DNA of 63,123 bases, counting the filler, from Reticulomyxa filosa (taxonomy: Eukaryota > Protista > Foraminifera), in NCBI GenBank assembly GCA_000512085.1. It is 19 parts of 19 records of this genome, joined end to end, with 100 filler letters (N's around TTAATTAATTAA, not from the genome) between each part and the next. Parts side by side here need not be neighbours in the genome. Positions count along the whole stretch, not along the records: positions 36,358 to 39,604 come from ASPP01018712.1; 18 more parts are not named here. One strand, written 5' to 3'. The notes under the pieces were generated by a model, which made no database searches, was not told the DNA's origin, and was given only the letters and a program-made list of their open reading frames with translations. Shown piece after piece: positions 4,582 through 39,604 of this stretch. The translations under genes and the position numbers were made by a program. Positions within the stretch are counted from its first letter, which is position 1, and each line of letters starts with the position of its first letter.

Positions 4582-6263
4582 TGATTGAGGTTGTTGTTGT
4601 AGTGGTTGCAATTGTGTTTGAGACTGAGACTGAGAAGGCTGTTGCAAGATTGGAATTGCAGGGATGGCAGGGATGCGTTGACTTTGCAGTTGCATTTGCA
4701 TTTGCACTTGCACTTGCTGCAACAAACCGAGCTGTCGATTCAACACGAGTAATTCTTGTTCCTTTTGCTGCTCCTTTTGAAGGGCGCGCTCCAATTGCAA
4801 CTGCATCTGTCGCAATCGCTCACAAGACTCGTCATATTTCTTTGAAATGTCAGTGCATTTGAACAAATCCATTTCCAGCTTTTCACACTTTTTTTGAAAT
4901 CATTACTTTCGCTTTTGAGCTGGTTGCACTTTTTGTTCCATTTACCCTCCTCTTTGCGCATATTGGCTTCCAGAGTCGACTGAGTCTTTTCCAACTGTTG
5001 TAATCTCTGCGTCAACGTCACGATATCAGCATCTTTCTGTTGTAGCAATTGAGATGATTGATCTAGCTTTTGTTGGAGCACAGAGCATTGTTGCGTGTGG
5101 TCTTTACACAATTGATCCATTGCGGTTATATGTTGCTTCGCCGCATGCAGTTTGTGTTGGGCGTCGCGATACTTGGCCAAAGCCTTTTGCTTGACTTTGG
5201 AGAACTTATTCTTCCACATAACGTGCTCCTTTTCGACCCATTGCTGTTGCAAAGCCTTGATTTGCTGTGTGGACGGACGACCCGTTTCCAACTCCAAACA
5301 AGCCGGACATTTATATTTGTCGTCCTGCATCGAACTCAGTTCGGCGTCGTTCATGCCCACGCACACCAAATGATACCATTCCTCGCAGTAGTCGCAGCAT
5401 ATCATTGACTTGTTCGCGTCATACGGCTTTCGACATAAGCAGTACACTTTTGATGGGTCTTCCTCTCCTTGAAACACTGGGGCTGTCACGCCGTGTCTAT
5501 TCATTGTCGAGTCCATTCCTTCCATCCCTTCTCCTTCCTCTATTCCTGTGCCATGTGTGACTGGTCCCTCTTCTTCCTCCTCTTCCTCTTCTTCTTCGTT
5601 GTCCTTCTTCTCCTCGCTCTTTCCGAATAGCGATTTCATTTTCCCTATTATCGCATCGATGCTCATCTTATCATTCACTTTCTCACTTTCTATCATCATC
5701 ATACCCCCTTCTCTCTCCTTTTCATTCTCTTTTGTTTTGTCAATGTCAATGTCCTTATCTTTCTCATTTTCAGTTCCGTTGTCCTTATCTTTGCTTTTAT
5801 TTTTGTTTTTGCTATCTCCGTTTTCATATAACCCTCGATTGTTTTCTTCTTTATTGTTTTCATTGTCATTTATATCTTCTTCTATATTTTCTTCTTCTAT
5901 ATTTTCTTCTTCTATATTTTCTTCTTCTGCATCTTCTTCCTCGTCTTCTTCTTCTTCTTCGTCTTCGTCATCGTCATCGTCGTCATCTTCATTGCTATTG
6001 GACGAGTCTGCGTCAGTGTCGGCATGCTTTGCCCATTCGCGGCTGCACTCCAACAGTCTGTCCTTTTCTTTTTGCAGCTGCGGAGTCGTCATCGCCTGAC
6101 ACTGCATAATGTACTCTTCAGCAGTCCATTCGCTATCGTAGTCCAATTGCACTTTCTTGTCCTTGCTTTTGTTTTTGTTTTTGCTTTTGCCTTTACTTTT
6201 GCTTTTGCGTTTGTTGTCTTTGCTTTTGTGTTTGTCTTTTTTCCTACTGTTTTTCGGTCTCAT
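4582..6263 (-). CDS. PHD-finger protein with acidic N-terminal part and coiled-coil/Q-rich C-terminal part (partial; frameshift at ~4890 in an A-run)
   Basis: KVYCLCRKPYDANKSMICCDYCEEWYHLVCVGM...YKCPAC is a C4HC3 PHD finger. One extra A joins it to the ORF MDLFKCTD.... Confidence 0.85.
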
Positions 6264-6627: not shown

Positions 6628-9419
6628 GGATTTCCCTCCGAACAATCGAAAAATCGAAAGTTGAGTGTGAAAGAGAGAGTAGAGAATTGGATAAATGCGG
6701 TGACGTGTACCACCTGGCTGGCGACAGAGATAATTCCCGATTTTCTGTGGCTGGGAGACAACTACGATGCACTAAACTACGAAGAGATGAAAAAGCGAGG
6801 CATCACGTACATACTGAACTGCAGCGCGGAGGACGCACTGAACAACTTGCAGGAATACTACGTGGCCAAGTGGTTGGAAGAGTTCAAGTCGCGAGAAATA
6901 GCCCGTCAGGACTACTGTCGTGACGTGATGGCCAAATATTTGGCGAGCACGAAGGAGGGGAAAGACCAGCAAACGTTGAAAGAACGAGCCATGCAGGCGT
7001 TTGAAAGCACATACATGACATCGTATCACCAACTGCTGGACAATTATAAAAAGAAGATTGAGACATTGGAAGAGTTTCGAGACGGAGAAAAAAACCGAAT
7101 CACTGCGATCATTTTGAAGCAATTGAAGGGACTTCGTTTCGACGAGTCCAACCCTCCAGCGCATTTGGAGGACATTGAAAAAAGTGTGGAGCTGTTGCAA
7201 TCGGTGGTGGAAAAGGAGAGTTATATCTACAACACACAAGAAGAAGCAGAATTTTCGAGACAAGAAGAAGACTCGGGCGAAAAGAAATTGGGAGAAGAAA
7301 CTCCGGATAACTACAAAGAGTTGAAAGAAGACGATGATGACGACGACGACGACGACGACAATGACACGCTCAGTGATGATGAGGACGAGGATGAGGATGA
7401 AGCTGATGCTGCAGGCAAAACAGGAGGAGGAGGAGCAGGAGGAGGAGCAGGAGGAGATATGAATAACTATTTAATGGAAGAGGAAATGTTCACCTTATAT
7501 GATGACGACATGGCCTTTGGCCAACGAAACAATAGCTATCGCCAACAAGAACTTGAAAAAGAAAAGCAACGCAAAAAAAAAGAAAAGGAAAAAAAAAACA
7601 GGAAAGAGAAAAAAGAAGACAGGAGAAAGAACGCAAGCGACAAGAGGAAGAGAAGAAAAGGGCTGAACCAATGTCTCGAGCGAGTTTCTTGCATATCGAC
7701 TTGGCCGCCAAAGAAACGGAAATTCGCAATGAATATATGAGTCAACACAGTGGCTATTTCAACTATTTAAACCGCTTTTGTGTGTCTTCATTGATTGGAG
7801 GAGGGGGTGCTGGAGGACAACAATTGGCCTCGTTGCAGCCAACCGATTTTTTGAGCAGTCCTGCCAATAGTGTCAAAAAGTACACTCCCAAATCAATGAA
7901 GGCGATTCGTCAAACCCATGCGTATAAAGCGTTGGACAAGGAAACATTGATGAAAGAGTTCCAACTGGCCATTGCCTTGTTGTTTGATCATATGCTACAA
8001 AAGAACAAAAAAGAATATTTGGAAAATATTGCTCGCGAAATTGCGCTGGAAAAAATTCAAAAGAAACACTTGAACAAACACTATCACAAACGCAAGAAAA
8101 TGATATTGATGAAAATGGGACGATTTTTGGAAGACGAAAATATTGGCAACAAAGATGGGGTGCCCAAAGAGATTAATGAAATGACATTGACCGATCTGTT
8201 TCGAAACATTAAAAACATTGAAGAATTTTTCCCTTACAAAATCAAAAACATTTATGCACGCAATTGGAAATCATACGATATCATTGGACTGCACAGCGAA
8301 GAGGTGATATCCTTCATTCAGGAGTGCAAAGCCAATAAATGCAAGATCTTGGTGTTTGATTGCAAGCCGTGCAAAGACAAGAAACCAAACGAATGGGAAG
8401 ATGTCATGAACGAAATGGAGTATGACATTGAGGATGAGGATGACAAGGGCTATGAATATACGGAGATCTTTGATCAAGACGACAACAATAGCGATGATGA
8501 AGTGGCCGGCGAAGATGGCAAACACAGTGATGTGGCCGACAGTGATAGCGAAAAGAGTGTGGAGTTGGATAAGACCAGCGATGATGGATTGGAAGTGAAC
8601 AAAGTCGGAGGCGATGAGCTGTTGCTCACACGAAGAAAAAGTGTCGAAGATGAGAAAAAAAAAAGAGAAGACACCAACTTTGAAGCCGTTCAAAAGTTTT
8701 CTCAAATGTGGAATCAAAGTGAAGTCGTTTTCAATCCCATTGGCATTGACAGCAAAAAAAGTGAACGCGACAATGACTCCGAAATCGGTATGCGATTGGA
8801 TCAAGACATGGACGTCATTCGAAAAGTACTCTTAAAAAATACTTTGAGTTGGAAAGAAATTAGTGAGCTGTACGATCTATATGATGATCTCTTGATCACA
8901 TTCTCGCAATGCCAGAAAACTGGCTCTGTCAGTGAAGAAACCATTCGCTGGATTACCAAAAAAATTCAAATGGTCGGTGGGCTTATTACCAAACATATGG
9001 GTAGAAAGTATTTGGAGAAAAAGGCCTTGCACACACTTTGGAAACAAAAGTTTTATTCCAGTCCAAATGGTCGCATCATTTCGGATGAAAGTGCTTTGGA
9101 TCGCGTTTTGAAACATTGCTTTGATCGAAGTGCAACTTTGGTGTTGTGCTACATGCTCTACGAAAAAAGAATTGAAGAGATTATGCAAAACAAAGAAACG
9201 ACCACCAGAAATGGAGTCAAAAACAAAAAGGCTAGAAAAAATCCCAAAGAAGTCTTGTTGGAATGTTACAAAGATATGTTGAGCAAGAAACCCAATTTGA
9301 TTTTGAATAAAGGATTTAAGCGGCAATTGGTCCAATATGCACATTTACTCAAATGTAAACAAATCAACGATCAAATTGTCAAGGAATTCAAATTCCAAAT
9401 GGAGCAAATCAAAATTTGA
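6628..9419 (+). CDS. Dual-specificity-phosphatase-like protein with very large insertions, probably a pseudophosphatase (5' partial; frameshift in A-runs ~7570-7620)
   Basis: DSP blocks in order: TEIIPDFLWLGD..ALNYEEMKKRGITYILNCS; DIIGLHSEEVISFIQECKANKCKILVFDC; FDRSATLVLCYML; CYKDMLSKKPNLILNKGFKRQLVQY. Confidence 0.8.
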
Positions 9420-10495
9420 TCTTTTTTTTCTTTTCCTTTTGAAAGTTTCTAGTCTTACGCTTGCCTTTTCTTGTATAAAAAAGATAAACCAGCTTTTTTT
9501 TTGTTTTGTTTTTTAATGGTTAATCTCATTGTTGCATCGGTTACGTGTTTTGATTAAAAAACTTACTACGTATTTTTTTTAAGGACAAAATACCACTCTG
9601 TTTTGCCCTAAGGTAATGAAATAAACAACAACTCGAAAGACTCTATGCAACAATTGCCTCTATCTTTTTAGATCAGTTTTGAATAGCAAAAAAATTGCAA
9701 ACTTATACACGCTAACGAAGTTCAAAAACGCTAGTAGTAAAGGGGGAGAGATTATCAAAACTTGTGATGGCACGTAATAATCAATTTTGTGTTTGGAATA
9801 ATTCCGTGAAAGGCTGCCCATTCCGAGAGAATTGTGCTAAAGCACACACTTCCGGACACTTTGCGACCATTCATAATATTAAGAGCCAATACGAAATAGA
9901 AAATTTTCTCCATTGTAATTTTGTATACTTTCGAACGTGTGAAACTAGATTAACTACAACTTGGTAAAACAAAACATAGTGACATATCCCAATGAATTTT
10001 TCTATGTTCACGGATATTCGGGTCAGGTAAACTGTTGCACAGTTGAATTCAGTTCCTCAACGGTTAGGCATATTCATTTTTCGAGAGAGAAAATGTATGA
10101 TCACATCTTGATATCACATATGAGAATAGGTCCGTGATTTGGCGATACAAAAATTGAAACATGTCAAAGACATCAATATTTCAACAGGCTCTCCAAAAGA
10201 AGTCGATCGTGCTTTCAGTTTGTTTTTTTTTTTTTTTGTTGTGTGGATCTTTTGCTACATTGAGAACTGGTTTGCAAGCAAAACAACAAAAAATGAATGA
10301 ATAGAATTGTCAAACCGTAAACAAGAAGATAATGTTTNNNNNNNNNNNNNNNNNNNNNNNNNNNNNNNNNNNNNNNNNNNNTTAATTAATTAANNNNNNN
10401 NNNNNNNNNNNNNNNNNNNNNNNNNNNNNNNNNNNNNCATGTGCATGCATGTTACAACTAAAAAGGAGATGGGGGGGGACATTTTGCAAAATTAG

Positions 10496-12294
10496 CATCG
10501 AGAGGCTTTGGAATCCATGCTACGAACACGCGCGCCGACAATTGCAATTGATTACAACTGCCCTAAAAAAACATTTGAGAGACTTAGTTAAACATTTGTT
10601 TGTTTTGATGTCATTGCTTGCTTTAAACTATTTGGATTTGTTATCTCCTTTGCCGAACAACAGAGCAAATAAGCGAAGAAGAAGTAAAAAAAGAGTTGGA
10701 GAGAACACAGAAAACGAAAGAGTTAGAAAAATATAGACAGCTGTATCAATCACTAGAAAAATCAATGCAACAATTGATTAATATATCCTGGGTATGTGTT
10801 TGTCCATTTTTTGGTTTTATTTTCCTTTCTCTCTACATTTTCTGTTTGTTTGTGTTTCAAAAGGAGTGGAAGGATGACAATGATGACTATACTCCCTATT
10901 CTGAAGACATAACCAAAAAACTCGAGTCCGCAAACGTTGGAGATATAGTTTTGTCAGCTCTTTTTTCTTTCCATTTTTTTATTAAAAAAAAGCAACGCCA
11001 CACGGAGAGCTTATGTGCTATAGATTTCATTAGAGCATGGACAGCACAAGTATGAACTAAAAAAAACAAGTAAAACCACAGCCATCCAAGAAAACCTAGT
11101 CACCAAAAAGCAAAGAGATGTAATAAGGAAGGAATCTTCCAAAAGTTAAACTATTGTTGTTATTATCATTGTAGTCAATTGGTTTGCAATTTAAACAGCT
11201 TTTTTTTTTTAATGGTATAAATTAGATCAAGAAGAGACAAATTCATATCCAAAGTGGTGGGTGCCGCAGCTGAACAGCAAAAAGGATATATACATAAAGG
11301 CAGACATAAACAAAAACGAAGAAGCCCGCAATGCGGTAGCCGAGTTCCAACGGACAATGAAAAGCCATTCGAGCAAGTATGAAATCGTTGACGTGTTTTT
11401 TGTTCAAAACGAAGAAATGTGGAAGCACCACACTGCACTCGAAAGTTTCGCTTTGATATTCTTTGACATCAGCTTTTACAAAAAAAAAAATCAGGACTTT
11501 TATTGAAAGCGAAGCAAAACAAAGTACTTTTGTAATACAAACAAAGGAAATTGGGTAGCAAGCGGTCGATTGTCGCGAAAAAATGTCAATATTCAAATGC
11601 TTTGGCATGGTATGAATCGTGATACACACAATATATACATATCGTGTTCATTTGTCTCCTTTCTTTCCAATTTCCTTTCTTTTCTGAGCAATTGTCAACA
11701 ATGCGCATTTCGTCTTTCGTCAAATAGGAACAACATCTGACACCGTGGAAAAAATCACTCACAAAGTACTTTATTTTCTATTTCTTCCCTTCCTTTTATT
11801 GATAAGATATGAAATATTTGTTTGTTGGTTCGGTAATGTGGGGGGGGTTCTCAATGCAAAGGGATTTCTTCGGGATTTTAGTGCGATTCATATGTACGGC
11901 AAGGGCGTGTATTTTGCCAAGGAGAGCAACTATCCAGTTTGCAAGGGCTATGCAAGATTTGACAATACTAGCGGATATGCGGAATTACTGTACTGTCGTG
12001 TAATTTGTGGGGAAAGTGTTATCGGGGTTGCTGATTATATAAGACCACCTGACAAAAAACATATCAAGCAAGAGCATGAAACCATGGTCAACGATTTGGT
12101 CAATCCTACCATTTATGTAGCTTGCTATGATCACCAAAGTTTAGTCTATAAAATCTTGCACTTATTTCAACGTATACCCGATTTTTTTTCCGATGTGCAA
12201 TGTACTTCTGCAATCTGTTTGAATAGGCTATCCTTTGATGAAATTAATTGTCAAAAAAGTGGAACACAAAAAGGCAGGCTTTCTTTGGTGGTAG
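10496..12294 (+). CDS. WWE-domain PARP-family mono-ADP-ribosyltransferase (PARP11/12-like), 5' partial. Introns: 10587-10663, 10792-10863, 10948-11023, 11145-11225, 11445-11546, 11610-11727, 11766-11861, 12139-12226.
   Basis: Spliced product gives WWE (SWEWKDDNDDYTPYSEDITKKLE...QENLVTKKQRDVIR) and PARP motifs MLWHGT, GF, MYGKGVYFA, LLYCRVICG, NPTIYV, QSYP. Confidence 0.88.
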
Positions 12295-36257: not shown

Positions 36258-36679
36258 NNNNNNNNNNNNNNNNNNNNNNNNNNNNNNNNNNNNNNNNNNN
36301 NTTAATTAATTAANNNNNNNNNNNNNNNNNNNNNNNNNNNNNNNNNNNNNNNNNNNNAGAGAGAGAGAGAAAAAAGGGATTATTGCAAAACAAAATTTTT
36401 TTTTTTTTTTTTAAGTATCGACTACGGGGATACACATAGATAAGCCAACTTATACAGTGAGATTATGTGTGTGTGTGTGTGTATATATATGTATGTGGTG
36501 CACATAGATGGGGACCCGTATATTTATTTTTTTCCTGTGTTGCTTCTTTCTTGACACTCGTATTGAGTTTCCGTAGTGCACTGATAACCAATTCAATCCA
36601 AGGGGTTCGCGCATCGTGGTTTAATTTTTTGTATGCCTTATTAATTGGGACGAGTTTAGGTCTTTTGATTACACTAATG

Positions 36680-36780
36680 CCAATTGCATTGCATGACGAA
36701 TATGATTGCACTTTTCTTGGCTGTTGTCAAGCCAATCATGCCCGAAAAAAGAAGGTCCGCTCCAAGATTGGCCAAAGTTT

Positions 36781-36811
<31 letters not shown>

Positions 36812-36815
36812 ATTA

Positions 36816-36847
<32 letters not shown>

Positions 36848-37310
36848 GGTAATATCGTCGATATTAAAAAGCAACGTACGATTGAACCAACGATCAGCAG
36901 AAACTCCGTTGATATGCCAAAACAGTGTTACAAAATATGGATTCGACAAAGTGTTGAAAAGCTATTTGCCACAACATACCAAAGTAACAGATATTGCTGC
37001 CACATTATTGAGTGAAGAGCAAGAGCAAAAGCAATTGCTTCGATTTCAACAGCAACAGCAACAGCAACAGCAACAACAACGTCAGTCATATGAGTACGAA
37101 CACGAGCAGGAACATGCATCCGTGCATGTACATGAACATGAAGAAGAGATGGAAGAAGACAAAGAAGAAGAAGAGTGCAAATATCATTATAACCTTGTTA
37201 CCCAAAAAAGTGATTTTCCTATTGACTCCATACCTTTGAGATTGCCTAGTAAACTAACCCGAAATTGCAATCCAACATGTTTGCTGCTTTTCAAAAAGCA
37301 TTTGCAGTTT
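36680..37310 (+). CDS. Exons of an uncharacterised Q/E-rich protein; probable intron 36777-36848
   Basis: Removing GTTTTG...A25-G joins ...RRSAPRLAK|VISSILKSNVRLNQRSAE... in frame. Confidence 0.45.
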
Positions 37311-37914
37311 TGAATTTTTTTTTTTTTATGCTTGTTTCGTTCCTCCATACATACTCTCTTCTTTCATCCATCTTCCCCCCCTCCCCCCCCCTTTTTTTTT
37401 TTGACTCCAGTTTTAGTTGCTTTAAAGAAGCTCATGTGCACACTTCTCCATAAAAAAAAAAGAAAATCTATGCCTTGTGTGCGTATTTTTCTTTTAATTA
37501 CTACATGGTATACGTAACACTGTTGGTGAAAAGGGAGGAAAAGGGCTGTCTTTTTTTTTCCCTTGGTGTTTGACGTTGTCTACATTCCATCCACCAAACT
37601 CACTGGAAAATATGCCCGATGAAATAATCAATGACAATAAAAAAAAAAAAAAGGACTTGCATGCCACGCTGTTGACACAGTATCGCCAGAAATATGGATC
37701 AATACAACATATGAATACTGACCAGGTACTTTTTTTTTTTTTTTAGTAAATTTTTTTTTTTTTTTTTGGGAAAATGTGCTGTTTCTCAATGAACATAACG
37801 TGCCCCCTTCCATGATACAATCTACTTAGATAAAGCGGTTTTTTAAAAAAAAATGAAAGGTAGTGTATGTATGTGTGTGTGTGTGTGTGTGTGTGTGAAA
37901 AGGAATCAAAGGAG

Positions 37915-38583
37915 ATGATGCCAAGCTTAAAGCAGAACAGTAACAAAAACGCCATCAGTGCGGGTACAAATACGAACATAAGTACGAATACAAATGCAAA
38001 TACGAATACAAACACGAATACGAATACAAGCACCGTCACAACCACGGCCACGACTGTGACGAATGGCAATGCGAATGCAATGATACACGTAAGTCCAAAC
38101 CTGAGCGCCGACGGAAATGTAAATCAGAACGGGGGCGTGACAGCGGAGGGCATGATCAAAAGCAAAAGCGAGGAATTGGCAGGCGTGCAGTCATTGGGGA
38201 ATTGGGGGAAATTGGGACACTCGAACCATGCCACGCGCGCAACGAAGGGAGACATGGATATCCATTTCAATCTGCCGTCTTCGCAGTCGTCGTTGTCACA
38301 GTTGAATTACTTGATGGAGCAAATTGCAAGGAACTTGCATTTGTACAATGAAGAGCAATTACTTGTATTGTGGGAAAAAACCCAACAATTTCAAAGGCTA
38401 ATTCAAATGGAAATTGCACAGCGCTCTCGTCCTCAATCTCAATCTCAATTTCAATCTCAATTTCAATCCCAAAATAATACCACTAACACATCCATTCCAC
38501 TTCAAATACCTGTCGCTTCTACCTTTTTTGATTCCACCGCTCTCAAATACAACCACATTCAACTACGCTCACTCTTTGCTGGG

Positions 38584-38648
<65 letters not shown>

Positions 38649-39552
38649 TGCAAATTATGCTTATCTGTCGAATGAACCTGAACATTTGTTCAGTCGGAAT
38701 AGTTATGCACCAACAACCAGCAACGGCAATGCCAACGGAAATGGCAATATAAACCACAATGGCAATGCCAGTACCAATAGTCTTAGCAACAGTAGCACAA
38801 AGATATATCGCAAAAACATAGGTAGTGACAACAGCACGGGCTCATCCATGTTTACATCTATGTATGTTTCACCTTATTTGAAAGACACAAATGTGTGCAA
38901 TGGAAACGGGTTTCAAAACGTTGCTCATTTTGCTGGAATGTTTCCCAATACCAATGACATTCAATTACTTCGAATGCAAGCAAATACAACGACGCCAACA
39001 AACACGAATACCAATTCAAACACAAACACAAATACGAATACAAATACAGGTATAAACACGAATACGTATACAAACATCAATATGCACTTGCATTCTGATA
39101 CAGCCCAACACCCAAATCCAAATTCCAATCCGGTGTCGGTATCAATTCCAATGTCGTATTCGAATTCGACAGCAAGTCCAAACTTCTTGCAAGAGAAGAC
39201 GACAGTGTGTCCTTGGATGCCATTCGAGCCATTGATGAAATCCACAGAAGCTGTTAACGTCTTGAATCATACGATTCACGGTGCGATGGATCATCACAAT
39301 TTCAAATCGCACTCGGCCAACTGTCACAAGCGGAACATGTCTTTTGATCACTACGACGAAGATGCCAATTTCCTTGCCATGGCAAGAAAGCGAATACGTC
39401 TCAATCCTAACAACGCCAACAACCACGGCGTTCATCACACGCCCGATCCCATTGCGCATTCTCATCTCTATGACAATTTTGACACCGACATGTTCTGGCT
39501 GCAGTTAGAAAAGATACCCAATCATCCTGACAGTGATCTGTTGTTCTGCTGA
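37915..39552 (+). CDS. Asn/Thr-rich low-complexity protein (last exon; possibly continues the upstream gene)
   Basis: Open frame >540 codons with NT repeats, poly-N, a short helical segment and a basic KRIR motif; no recognisable domain. Confidence 0.7.
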
Positions 39553-39571
39553 ATTATCTGCAAAAAAAAAA

Positions 39572-39604
<33 letters not shown>

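What the first reader, a model, noticed from the sequence alone, without database searches (positions are those of the whole stretch)
36777..36848. A 72-nt intron that is almost purely a poly(U)/poly(A) hairpin
Seen: GTTTTGA-T28-ATTA-T7-A25-G; removing it joins two protein-like frames. Folding would give a ~25-bp U:A stem that brings GT and AG together, with no free pyrimidine tract or clear branch consensus. Established: complementary simple repeats at intron ends in teleost fish (AC/GT) can replace U2AF2 dependence. Inference: a homopolymer version of structure-defined splicing, and the best candidate for an undescribed system here.
Basis: partly seen in the sequence, partly recalled or inferred. 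Interest (0 to 1): 0.85.

Follow-up and report, generated by a model that had tools for sequence, protein, structure and literature searches.

The report
Homopolymer-filled intron end in a foraminifer
The T-run/A-run stretch is real and forms the 3' end of an intron in a Reticulomyxa filosa gene that GenBank wrongly translates as protein. Such runs are common in this genome, and nothing yet shows that the hairpin they could form drives splicing.

Summary
The piece is Reticulomyxa filosa contig ASPP01018712.1.

GenBank model RFI_21466 reads the tract as poly-Phe/poly-Lys and removes 36849-36900 as an intron. Comparison with two paralogs and one intron-free homolog shows the opposite:
- 36849 onward is conserved coding sequence. 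All 6 differences in 36849-36899 are synonymous, and 24 of 29 differences fall at codon position 3.
- AG at 36847-48 is the only usable acceptor. It sits at an intron position and phase shared by both paralogs.

The tract is therefore intronic, and the acceptor is well supported. The donor is not settled. It could be 36777 (72 nt), 36755 (94 nt, the only option with a usable branch-like TTGAT), or an exon beyond the contig start. No RNA data could be obtained.

Homopolymers are everywhere here: 87 A/T runs of 7 or more in 23.7 kb. Among 13 homology-supported introns, 5 have a T-run near the donor and 6 have an A-run next to the acceptor G. Only 3 have both, which is what independence predicts. 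The paralogous introns at this position lack the A-run.

Best reading: an ordinary GT-AG intron whose U-tract and A-tract expanded by slippage, with the hairpin (-18 kcal/mol) as a by-product. Structure-assisted splicing is not excluded.

The parts
36777..36848 (+). A25G|GTA)
   Evidence: Sequence and fold. The first 7 nt are identical to the donor of the next intron at 37307. It would link a 28-codon ATG-ORF (36693-36776) in phase 0 to the conserved exon. It has no usable branch motif. There is no RNA evidence.
36755..36848 (+). Alternative 94-nt intron (AAG|GTCCGC ... A25G|GTA)
   Evidence: This is the only GT that links the 98-codon open frame A (the frame GenBank uses, ATG at 36677) to the conserved frame at 36849. 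It places TTGAT (YTRAY) 29 nt from the donor and 65 nt from the AG, with no other AG in between. GTC donors also occur in other R. filosa introns (L004 PSD, L001 I0).
36784..36822 (+). U-tract (T28 ATTA T7): polypyrimidine tract and 5' arm of the predicted hairpin
   Evidence: The paralog L001 has T15 at the equivalent place.
36823..36847 (+). A25 tract directly before the acceptor G: 3' arm of the predicted hairpin
   Evidence: An A-run of 8 or more next to the acceptor G is seen in 6 of 13 homology-supported R. filosa introns.
36847..36848 (+). Acceptor AG
   Evidence: It is the only AG between the in-frame stop TAA (36822-24) and the conserved Val codon at 36849. The same AG|GTAATATCG junction occurs in paralog L001, and DNA homology starts at 36843. 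The intron position and phase are the same in L001 (5459-5572) and L004 (10313-10533). The intron-free homolog P0003 reads ..KAA|VIAAILKSNV continuously across it.
36849..37209 (+). Conserved coding exon (frame of 36849), VISSILKSNVRLNQRSAETPLICQNS...
   Evidence: Compared with paralog L001, 24 of 29 differences fall at codon position 3, with 22 synonymous and 5 non-synonymous codon changes. All 6 differences in 36849-36899 are synonymous. The motif is invariant in P0002, P0003 and P0004. The 3' end of this exon is uncertain (see the unexplained frame change).
36849..36900 (+). GenBank's 52-nt 'intron' of RFI_21466, which is really coding
   Evidence: P0001 skips these 17 codons and instead translates the T/A tract as F9IIFLK8. 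The skipped codons are conserved in three homologs.
37307..37653 (+). Next intron (347 nt): GCA|GTTTTGAA-T13 ... A14-G|GAC
   Evidence: The flanking exons match continuous P0003 (AYQRAFSE|LH against AFQKAFA|DLH). All paralog differences in the flanks are synonymous, or 6 synonymous to 2 non-synonymous in exon 3. U13 pairs with A14 in the MFE and centroid folds.
37654..37725 (+). 72-nt exon DLHATLLTQYRQKYGSIQHMNTDQ
   Evidence: 92% DNA identity to L001, 6 synonymous to 2 non-synonymous changes, and a tblastn match to P0003.
37726..37902 (+). Third intron: CAG|GTAC-T15-AGTAAA-T17 ... (GT)n GAAAAG|GAA (acceptor less certain)
   Evidence: The donor CAG|GTAC+T-run is shared with L001. The acceptor is in frame with the long ORF and aligns with AAG|GAA in L001.

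Best explanation
The T/A tract is the 3' portion of an ordinary U2-type GT-AG intron in a Reticulomyxa filosa gene. The gene belongs to a lineage-restricted family of unknown function.

Shown:
- Splicing must use AG at 36847-48 and join an upstream exon in phase 0 to the conserved exon that starts at 36849.

Inferred:
- The donor is GT at 36755 (94 nt, with TTGAT as branch site) or GT at 36777 (72 nt). Less likely, it lies in an exon beyond the contig start.
- The U-tract serves as the polypyrimidine tract.
- The A-tract is an overgrown version of the A-run that often lies directly before the acceptor G in this genome.
- Both tracts grew by replication slippage in a genome prone to homopolymer expansion.
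- The U:A hairpin they can form is a tolerated by-product. It is an A-U-only helix, easily opened by helicases and by proteins that bind U or A tracts.

The public annotation is wrong at this locus. It translates the tract and removes conserved codons as an intron.
For: - Organism and annotation.
- Coding frame from 36849: 24 of 29 differences at codon position 3, and all 6 in 36849-36899 synonymous.
- Invariant V..(I/L)L.SNV.L..SAETPLIC.NS motif in P0002, P0003 and P0004.
- A single possible AG lies after the in-frame stop.
- Same intron position and phase in L001 and L004, and continuous in the cDNA-like L003.
- The paralogous introns lack the A-run. L001 has T15+GAAACAG and L004 has neither run.
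- Homopolymers are ubiquitous: 14 runs of 8 or more in this 3.2-kb contig and 87 runs of 7 or more in 23.7 kb.
- A-run+G acceptors occur without a donor T-run in unrelated genes: the C2-domain intron (T12A9G), the PSD intron (A11G) and a Ras-domain intron (A13CAAG). Their exon edges were placed with Pfam domain coordinates.
- Donor T-runs and acceptor A-runs co-occur as independence predicts (3 of 13; p=0.41).
- Mean R. filosa intron length is 87 nt, so 72-94 nt is typical (PMC13746701).
- R. filosa is used as a reference organism with a non-reduced spliceosome (PMC10245619).
Against: - There is no transcript evidence at all.
- The upstream exon is not homologous to the family's upstream exon, so the donor is not fixed.
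- Abutting TnAm tracts have correlated arm lengths (rho 0.83-0.94, n=7) and outnumber AnTm tracts 7 to 3. Slippage of two independent runs does not predict either result.
- The next intron in the same gene also has end-pairing runs, and both arms are shorter in the paralog (T13/A14 against T10/A8).
- An A-run in place of a pyrimidine tract directly before the AG is not the canonical 3' splice-site layout. 'Ordinary' may therefore understate how this organism recognises acceptors.
Confidence: 0.6

Rival explanations
1. Structure-assisted splicing. The U-tract and A-tract pair in the pre-mRNA. [quoted passage not shown] Either way it would help splice-site pairing, as a homopolymer analogue of the zebrafish (AC)m-(GT)n introns.
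For: - A 26-bp helix is predicted, leaving GU and AG at its base.
- Intron 2 of the same gene pairs U13 with A14 across 347 nt in the MFE and centroid folds.
- Both arms are shorter together in the paralog (T10/A8).
- TnAm arm lengths correlate, and TnAm outnumbers AnTm 7 to 3.
- In four of seven TnAm tracts the next base is the G that completes an AG.
- A published precedent exists for repeat-bridged introns that do without U2AF2 (PMC4691745).
Against: - Paralogous introns at the same position are presumably spliced without any A-run.
- Three A-run acceptors have no donor T-run, and two donor T-runs have no acceptor A-run. Co-occurrence is at the chance level.
- The short versions (T12A9, T5GA11) cannot form a stable helix. 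The C2 intron fold has z = +0.4.
- A-U-only stems slide and are weak per base pair.
- Pairing would bury the polypyrimidine tract.
- There are no structure-probing or RNA data.
Confidence: 0.2
2. There is no short intron here. This copy is a 5'-truncated segmental duplicate, or its true upstream exon lies more than 490 nt away beyond the contig start. On this reading GTTTTGA and GTCCGC are chance GTs. The T/A tract is then just the end of a long intron, or a duplication-breakpoint or flank element of the poly-T/poly-A kind that marks gene borders in Dictyostelium.
For: - DNA homology to the paralog begins only at 36843.
- The 490 nt upstream hold nothing like the family's upstream exon.
- The contig starts in a microsatellite.
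- The upstream ORFs have near-zero or weak codon-usage scores.
- Poly-T/poly-A tracts demarcate Dictyostelium genes (PMC3371697).
- An A14T29 tract follows the stop codon at 39562-39604.
Against: - The exon at 36849 has no in-frame ATG for about 100 codons yet evolves under purifying selection from its first codon. It must therefore be spliced to something upstream, so the tract is intronic in any case.
- Intron interiors are unalignable between the copies elsewhere too, for example in intron 2. Loss of homology at 36843 therefore does not prove a breakpoint.
- A 98-codon open frame just upstream is unlikely by chance (my rough estimate is about 0.3% per frame).
Confidence: 0.15
3. GenBank's reading. 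The tract is translated as F9-II-F-L-K8 within RFI_21466, and the intron is 36849-36900.
For: The frame is open through the tract, and a GT..AG pair exists at 36849-36900.
Against: The 17 codons that this model removes are conserved in three homologs and differ from the paralog only synonymously. No homolog has a poly-Phe/poly-Lys insert.
Confidence: 0.02

Closest known systems
(AC)m-(GT)n repeat-bridged introns of zebrafish and other teleosts (Lin et al. 2016, PMC4691745)
   Same: - Complementary simple repeats lie near the 5' and 3' ends of an intron in a fixed order.
- They are predicted to form a helix that brings the splice sites together.
- The repeats arise by slippage and are poorly conserved between orthologous introns.
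   Different: - Here the repeats are homopolymers, giving A-U pairs only.
- The U arm doubles as the polypyrimidine tract.
- In my 13-intron sample the two arms do not co-occur above chance, whereas co-occurrence across introns is the defining statistic in fish.
- There is no functional test here.
Repeat-filled introns of Physarum polycephalum (Schaap et al. 2015, PMC4758236)
   Same: The genome is littered with mononucleotide or pyrimidine-rich repeats. [quoted passage not shown]
   Different: - The supergroup is different (Amoebozoa, not Rhizaria).
- The text I read reports no A-run placed directly before the acceptor and no T-then-A order.
Secondary structures that shorten the branch point-to-3' splice site distance, or the 5' splice site-to-branch point distance, in budding-yeast introns. 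[quoted passage not shown] 1995; Charpentier and Rosbash 1996). The branch point-to-3' splice site cases I recall from memory and did not check here.
   Same: In the 94-nt model the helix would sit between the TTGAT branch site and the AG. It would reduce an effective distance of 65 nt to about 10 nt.
   Different: The yeast stems are mixed-sequence and intron-specific. Here there is no experimental support, and the paralogous introns lack the stem.
Poly-T/poly-A tracts that demarcate Dictyostelium genes and nucleosome-free regions (Chang et al. 2012, PMC3371697)
   Same: Long dA:dT homopolymers in an AT-rich amoeboid protist lie precisely at the borders of transcribed or coding units. The A14T29 tract after the stop codon at 39562-39604 fits this kind.
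   Different: The Dictyostelium tracts mark gene ends, not exon-intron borders. The tract studied here precedes an internal coding exon.

Membership tests
U2-type GT-AG spliceosomal intron | AG acceptor whose use restores a conserved reading frame | tested here: met
   AG at 36847-48 is the only AG between the in-frame stop (36822-24) and the conserved codon at 36849. The junction position and phase match paralogs L001 and L004 and the continuous P0003.
U2-type GT-AG spliceosomal intron | GT donor in phase with an upstream coding exon | tested here: inconclusive
   There are two in-phase candidates, 36755 (frame A, 98 open codons) and 36777 (frame B, 33 open codons). The upstream sequence is not homologous to the family exon, and codon usage does not separate the two.
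U2-type GT-AG spliceosomal intron | Branch-point motif at a workable distance, followed by a pyrimidine tract | tested here: inconclusive
   TTGAT at 36779-83 is usable only if the donor is 36755 (29 nt from the donor, 65 nt from the AG, no AG in between). It is 7 nt from the donor in the 72-nt model. The U-tract is present. YTRAY was found in only 6 of the other 12 introns.
U2-type GT-AG spliceosomal intron | Absent from mature mRNA | not testable with these tools
   No RNA run was listed. No other assembly carries the locus. No transcript-derived protein was found.
Repeat-bridged introns, (AC)m-(GT)n type | Complementary repeats at opposite intron ends that fold into a stable bridging helix | tested here: met
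   A 26-bp U:A stem at -18.2 kcal/mol. The ends of intron 2 pair in the centroid fold. This is prediction only.
Repeat-bridged introns, (AC)m-(GT)n type | The two repeats co-occur within introns above the level expected under independence | tested here: not met
   Among 13 homology-supported introns, 5 have a donor T-run, 6 have an acceptor A-run and 3 have both. Fisher one-sided p=0.41. The sample is small and includes paralogs, so power is low.
Repeat-bridged introns, (AC)m-(GT)n type | Splicing depends on the pairing and is independent of U2AF2 | not testable with these tools
   This needs minigene or in vitro assays. Indirect evidence against it: paralogous introns at the same site lack the A arm.
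Euglenid non-conventional introns (recalled from memory) | Non-GT-AG borders with base-paired intron ends | tested here: not met
   The borders here are canonical GT and AG.
Dictyostelium-type gene-border poly-T/poly-A tracts | The tract lies at the transcription start or end of a gene | tested here: not met
   The tract precedes an internal exon that has no ATG for about 100 codons and is under purifying selection from its first codon.

The most novel reading that the evidence does not exclude
Reticulomyxa filosa, and perhaps foraminifera generally, may define many introns with a U-run just after the donor and an A-run directly before the acceptor G. On this reading the two runs pair to bridge the splice sites, or to bring the branch site next to the AG. 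That would be a homopolymer counterpart of the zebrafish AC/GT introns. It would come with an acceptor layout (U-tract, then A-tract, then G) that departs from the usual branch point-pyrimidine tract-YAG order.
Probability: 0.15. Interest if true: 0.8.

Novelty: new member of a known kind. Interest (0 to 1): 0.4.

Why it matters
Practically, it shows that public R. filosa gene models can translate homopolymer introns as poly-Phe/poly-Lys, remove conserved codons as introns, and split one gene into two. Proteome-based work on this reference rhizarian inherits these errors.

Biologically, the small sample points to an unusual intron-end grammar. Donors mostly begin GTTT and are often followed by a T-run. 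About half of the acceptors are an A-run plus G, sometimes preceded by a U-tract of matched length. If this holds genome-wide it would bear on how 3' splice sites are recognised without a pyrimidine tract next to the AG. It would also bear on whether RNA pairing helps define introns outside vertebrates. The genome assembly and transcriptome reads of this species should allow a direct test.

Tried and rejected
- RNA evidence: the look-up of sequencing runs listed no run, so read laying could not be used. No other assembly holds the locus.
- Protein searches with the long downstream ORF failed. One search was swamped by low-complexity words, and (region-restricted) found nothing.
- Two metagenome scans for relatives found nothing.
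- I first thought the upstream frame A resembled the family's N-terminal domain. BLASTP and tblastn show no similarity, and I withdrew that claim.
- Rebuilding GenBank exon chains by exhaustive GT..AG enumeration gave too many solutions to be useful.
- A codon-usage score could not decide between the two donor candidates.
- Rfam: nothing reached a gathering score. The hits on the tract are low-complexity noise.
- The ORF after the T15A17 tract in L001 gave no Pfam hit and only weak LRR-like Atlas leads, so that putative acceptor stays unverified.
- The Glockner et al. 2014 genome paper is not in the held library.
Exons were searched and aligned separately by reference.

Full report
**Observation.** Folded as RNA, the 72 nt give a 26-bp U:A stem with a 9-nt loop at -18.2 kcal/mol. 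Ten nucleotides are free at the 5' end and one at the 3' end. The shuffle z-score is uninformative because dinucleotide shuffles keep the runs.

**Where it comes from.** The exon downstream of the tract matches two GenBank proteins of the foraminifer Reticulomyxa filosa. The piece is identical to contig ASPP01018712.1, which is 3247 bp. Published summaries of that assembly give 101.9 Mb, N50 3.6 kb, 35% GC, about 30% repeats and a mean intron length of 87 nt (PMC13746701 and PMC10245619). An intron of 72-94 nt is therefore ordinary in size.

**What the public annotation does, and why it is wrong.** GenBank protein RFI_21466 (P0001) reads straight through the tract as ..SFDFFFFFFFFFIIFLKKKKKKKK. 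It then removes 36849-36900 as a 52-nt intron. Three comparisons contradict this.
- *Paralog RFI_31419.* This paralog lies on contig ASPP01027619.1 (L001). It aligns from 36843 onward. In 36849-37064, 24 of 29 differences fall at codon position 3 of the frame starting at 36849, with 22 synonymous and 5 non-synonymous codon changes. All six differences inside GenBank's 'intron' are synonymous.
- *Encoded motif.* The peptide V-I-S-S-I-L-K-S-N-V-R-L-N-Q-R-S-A-E-T-P-L-I-C-Q-N-S is nearly invariant in a third R. filosa paralog (P0004, locus L004). It is also nearly invariant in P0003, a 319-aa protein from a JGI contig with one uninterrupted ORF that looks like cDNA.
- *No insert in homologs.* None of the homologs has a poly-Phe/poly-Lys insert.

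**The acceptor.** In the conserved frame a TAA stop sits at 36822-24, and the only AG before the conserved Val codon is 36847-48. L001 has the same AG|GTAATATCG junction, preceded by T15 GAAACAG. Its intron runs from GCA|GTTTAC at 5459 to 5572. L004 has an intron at the same place and phase (GCA|GTTTAA .. TTGAACAG|GTG, 10313-10533). P0003 reads ..KAA|VIAA.. continuously across that point. The exon has no in-frame ATG for about 100 codons yet is under purifying selection from its first codon. It must therefore be spliced to something upstream. I regard the acceptor, and hence the intronic status of the T/A tract, as shown by comparative evidence, though not by RNA.

**The donor is not settled.** Enumerating every GT upstream leaves two sensible options.
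- *36777 (AAA|GTTTTGA, 72 nt).* It links a 28-codon ATG-ORF (from 36693) to the exon. Its first seven bases are identical to the donor of the next intron at 37307.
- *36755 (AAG|GTCCGC, 94 nt).* It links the 98-codon open frame that GenBank uses (ATG at 36677). It puts TTGAT, a YTRAY branch-like motif, 29 nt from the donor and 65 nt from the AG with no AG in between. This geometry resembles that of two introns in the phosphatidylserine decarboxylase gene. In the 72-nt model the same motif is only 7 nt from the donor and cannot serve.

A codon-usage score trained on about 2100 R. filosa codons is weakly positive for the long frame A and about zero for both short ORFs, so it does not decide. I withdrew an early impression that frame A resembles the family's N-terminal domain, because BLASTP and tblastn find nothing. 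The family's upstream exon is absent from the 490 nt before 36849, so it may lie beyond the contig start. My split is roughly 40% for 36755, 30% for 36777 and 30% for elsewhere.

**How unusual is the tract in this genome?** It is extreme in length but not in kind. The three R. filosa loci I could fetch total 23.7 kb and hold 87 A or T runs of 7 or more. The 3.2-kb contig alone has 14 runs of 8 or more. I assembled 13 introns whose edges are supported by the paralog and P0003 comparisons, or by Pfam domain coordinates for C2, PH, Ras and PS_Dcarbxylase. They show these patterns.
- *Donors.* Most begin GTTT. GTAC, GTC, GTG and GTTA also occur.
- *Composition.* The first 30 nt are T-rich in 10 of the 12 introns tabulated.
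- *Donor T-runs.* Five introns have a T-run of 8 or more near the donor.
- *Acceptor A-runs.* Six have an A-run of 8 or more directly before the acceptor G: A25, A14, A8, A9, A11, and A13 followed by CAAG.
- *Examples from unrelated genes.* The C2-domain intron ends T12 A9 G. The decarboxylase intron ends TTTTTG A11 G. The Ras intron has an A13 near its end and no T-run.

**Does the pairing matter?** Points in favour:
- The next intron of this gene (37307-37653) starts GTTTTGAA-T13 and ends A14-G, and these ends pair in both the MFE and centroid structures.
- Its paralog has both arms shorter (T10 and A8).
- Abutting TnAm tracts outnumber AnTm tracts 7 to 3.
- In four of the seven TnAm tracts the next base is the G that completes an AG.
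- Their arm lengths correlate (rho 0.83-0.94, permutation p 0.017-0.002, n=7).

Points against:
- The paralogous introns at the very position of the finding have no A-run.
- Three A-run acceptors lack a donor T-run, and two donor T-runs lack an acceptor A-run.
- The two features co-occur in 3 of 13 introns where independence predicts 2.3 (Fisher p=0.41).
- The shorter TnAm versions cannot form a stable helix. The C2 intron fold has z = +0.4.

Co-occurrence across introns is the statistic that defined the zebrafish AC/GT class (PMC4691745). My sample is small and partly made of paralogs, so this is weak evidence against the structural model rather than a refutation.

**Most likely mechanism.**
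- *Shown:* the tract is removed by use of AG at 36847-48.
- *Inferred:* it belongs to a conventional GT-AG intron. The U-tract acts as the pyrimidine tract. The A-tract is a slippage-expanded version of the acceptor-proximal A-run that is common in this genome. The hairpin is incidental.

I give this 0.6. Structure-assisted splicing gets 0.2, and in the 94-nt model it would act by shortening the branch-to-AG distance. A long intron or duplication-boundary reading gets 0.15. GenBank's coding reading gets 0.02.

The closest published parallels are the zebrafish repeat-bridged introns and the repeat-filled introns of Physarum (PMC4758236). For A/T tracts at gene borders, the closest is Dictyostelium (PMC3371697).

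**Limits.**
- The genome paper itself was not available.
- Homopolymer lengths in a draft assembly are approximate.

Noticed in passing
window 36677-37313 and 37867-39552; L001 4192-5288 and 5341-5998: GenBank's two genes on this contig are probably one gene. The same holds for two adjacent genes on the paralogous contig. The intron-free homolog P0003 spans the N-terminal domain, the SAETPLIC exon and the DLHATLL exon. That last exon's CAG|GTAC donor leads in frame into the long downstream ORF.
   Followed up: partly
window 37210-37268 (compare L001 about 5880-5925): The coding register must change between the SAETPLIC exon and ..NPKLQSNMFAAFQKAFA. In L001 a 44-nt intron (G|GTGATA .. AATAAAG|TC) would do it. 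In the window the same donor exists, but the aligned acceptor lacks the G, and TAG TAA stops lie in register just upstream. This could be a one-base assembly error, an odd acceptor, or damage to this copy.
   Followed up: partly
L004 5324-5430 (-), 2937-3018 (-), about 7411-7496 (-): Introns in unrelated conserved genes (C2 domain, phosphatidylserine decarboxylase, Ras domain) end in T12A9G, TTTTTG-A11-G and A13CAAG. An A-run placed directly before the acceptor G looks like a recurrent R. filosa acceptor layout.
   Followed up: partly
all three R. filosa loci (L001, L002, L004): Donors are mostly GTTT(A/T/G), not the GTAAGT or GTATGT types common elsewhere. Seven of 13 introns start GTTT.
   Followed up: no
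L001 73-104: A T15A17 tract is followed by G|G and an 88-codon open frame on the + strand, while GenBank calls a gene on the opposite strand. This may be another TnAmG acceptor, but the ORF has no recognisable family.
   Followed up: partly
window 39562-39604: An A14 T29 tract in the opposite order begins 10 nt after the stop codon of the long ORF and runs to the contig end. It may be a gene-end tract of the Dictyostelium kind, and it is a likely cause of the assembly break.
   Followed up: no
L001 5274-5377 versus L004 10001-10312: L001 has a 104-nt intron (CAG|GTCAAC .. GTAAAG|TAT) between ..QSTQ and YCSEV... The L004 paralog is continuous at this point, so intron presence differs between paralogs.
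   Followed up: no
L004 10729-10836: P0004 (GenBank) translates a 108-nt in-frame stretch (GAA|GTTTGG .. TCTAAG|GAT). It sits exactly at the intron-2 position of the other copies and is absent from P0003, so it is probably another intron read as protein.
   Followed up: no
L003 2-181: The JGI contig carrying P0003 has an inverted duplicate of its first 180 nt. This looks like an assembly chimera typical of transcriptome contigs.
   Followed up: no
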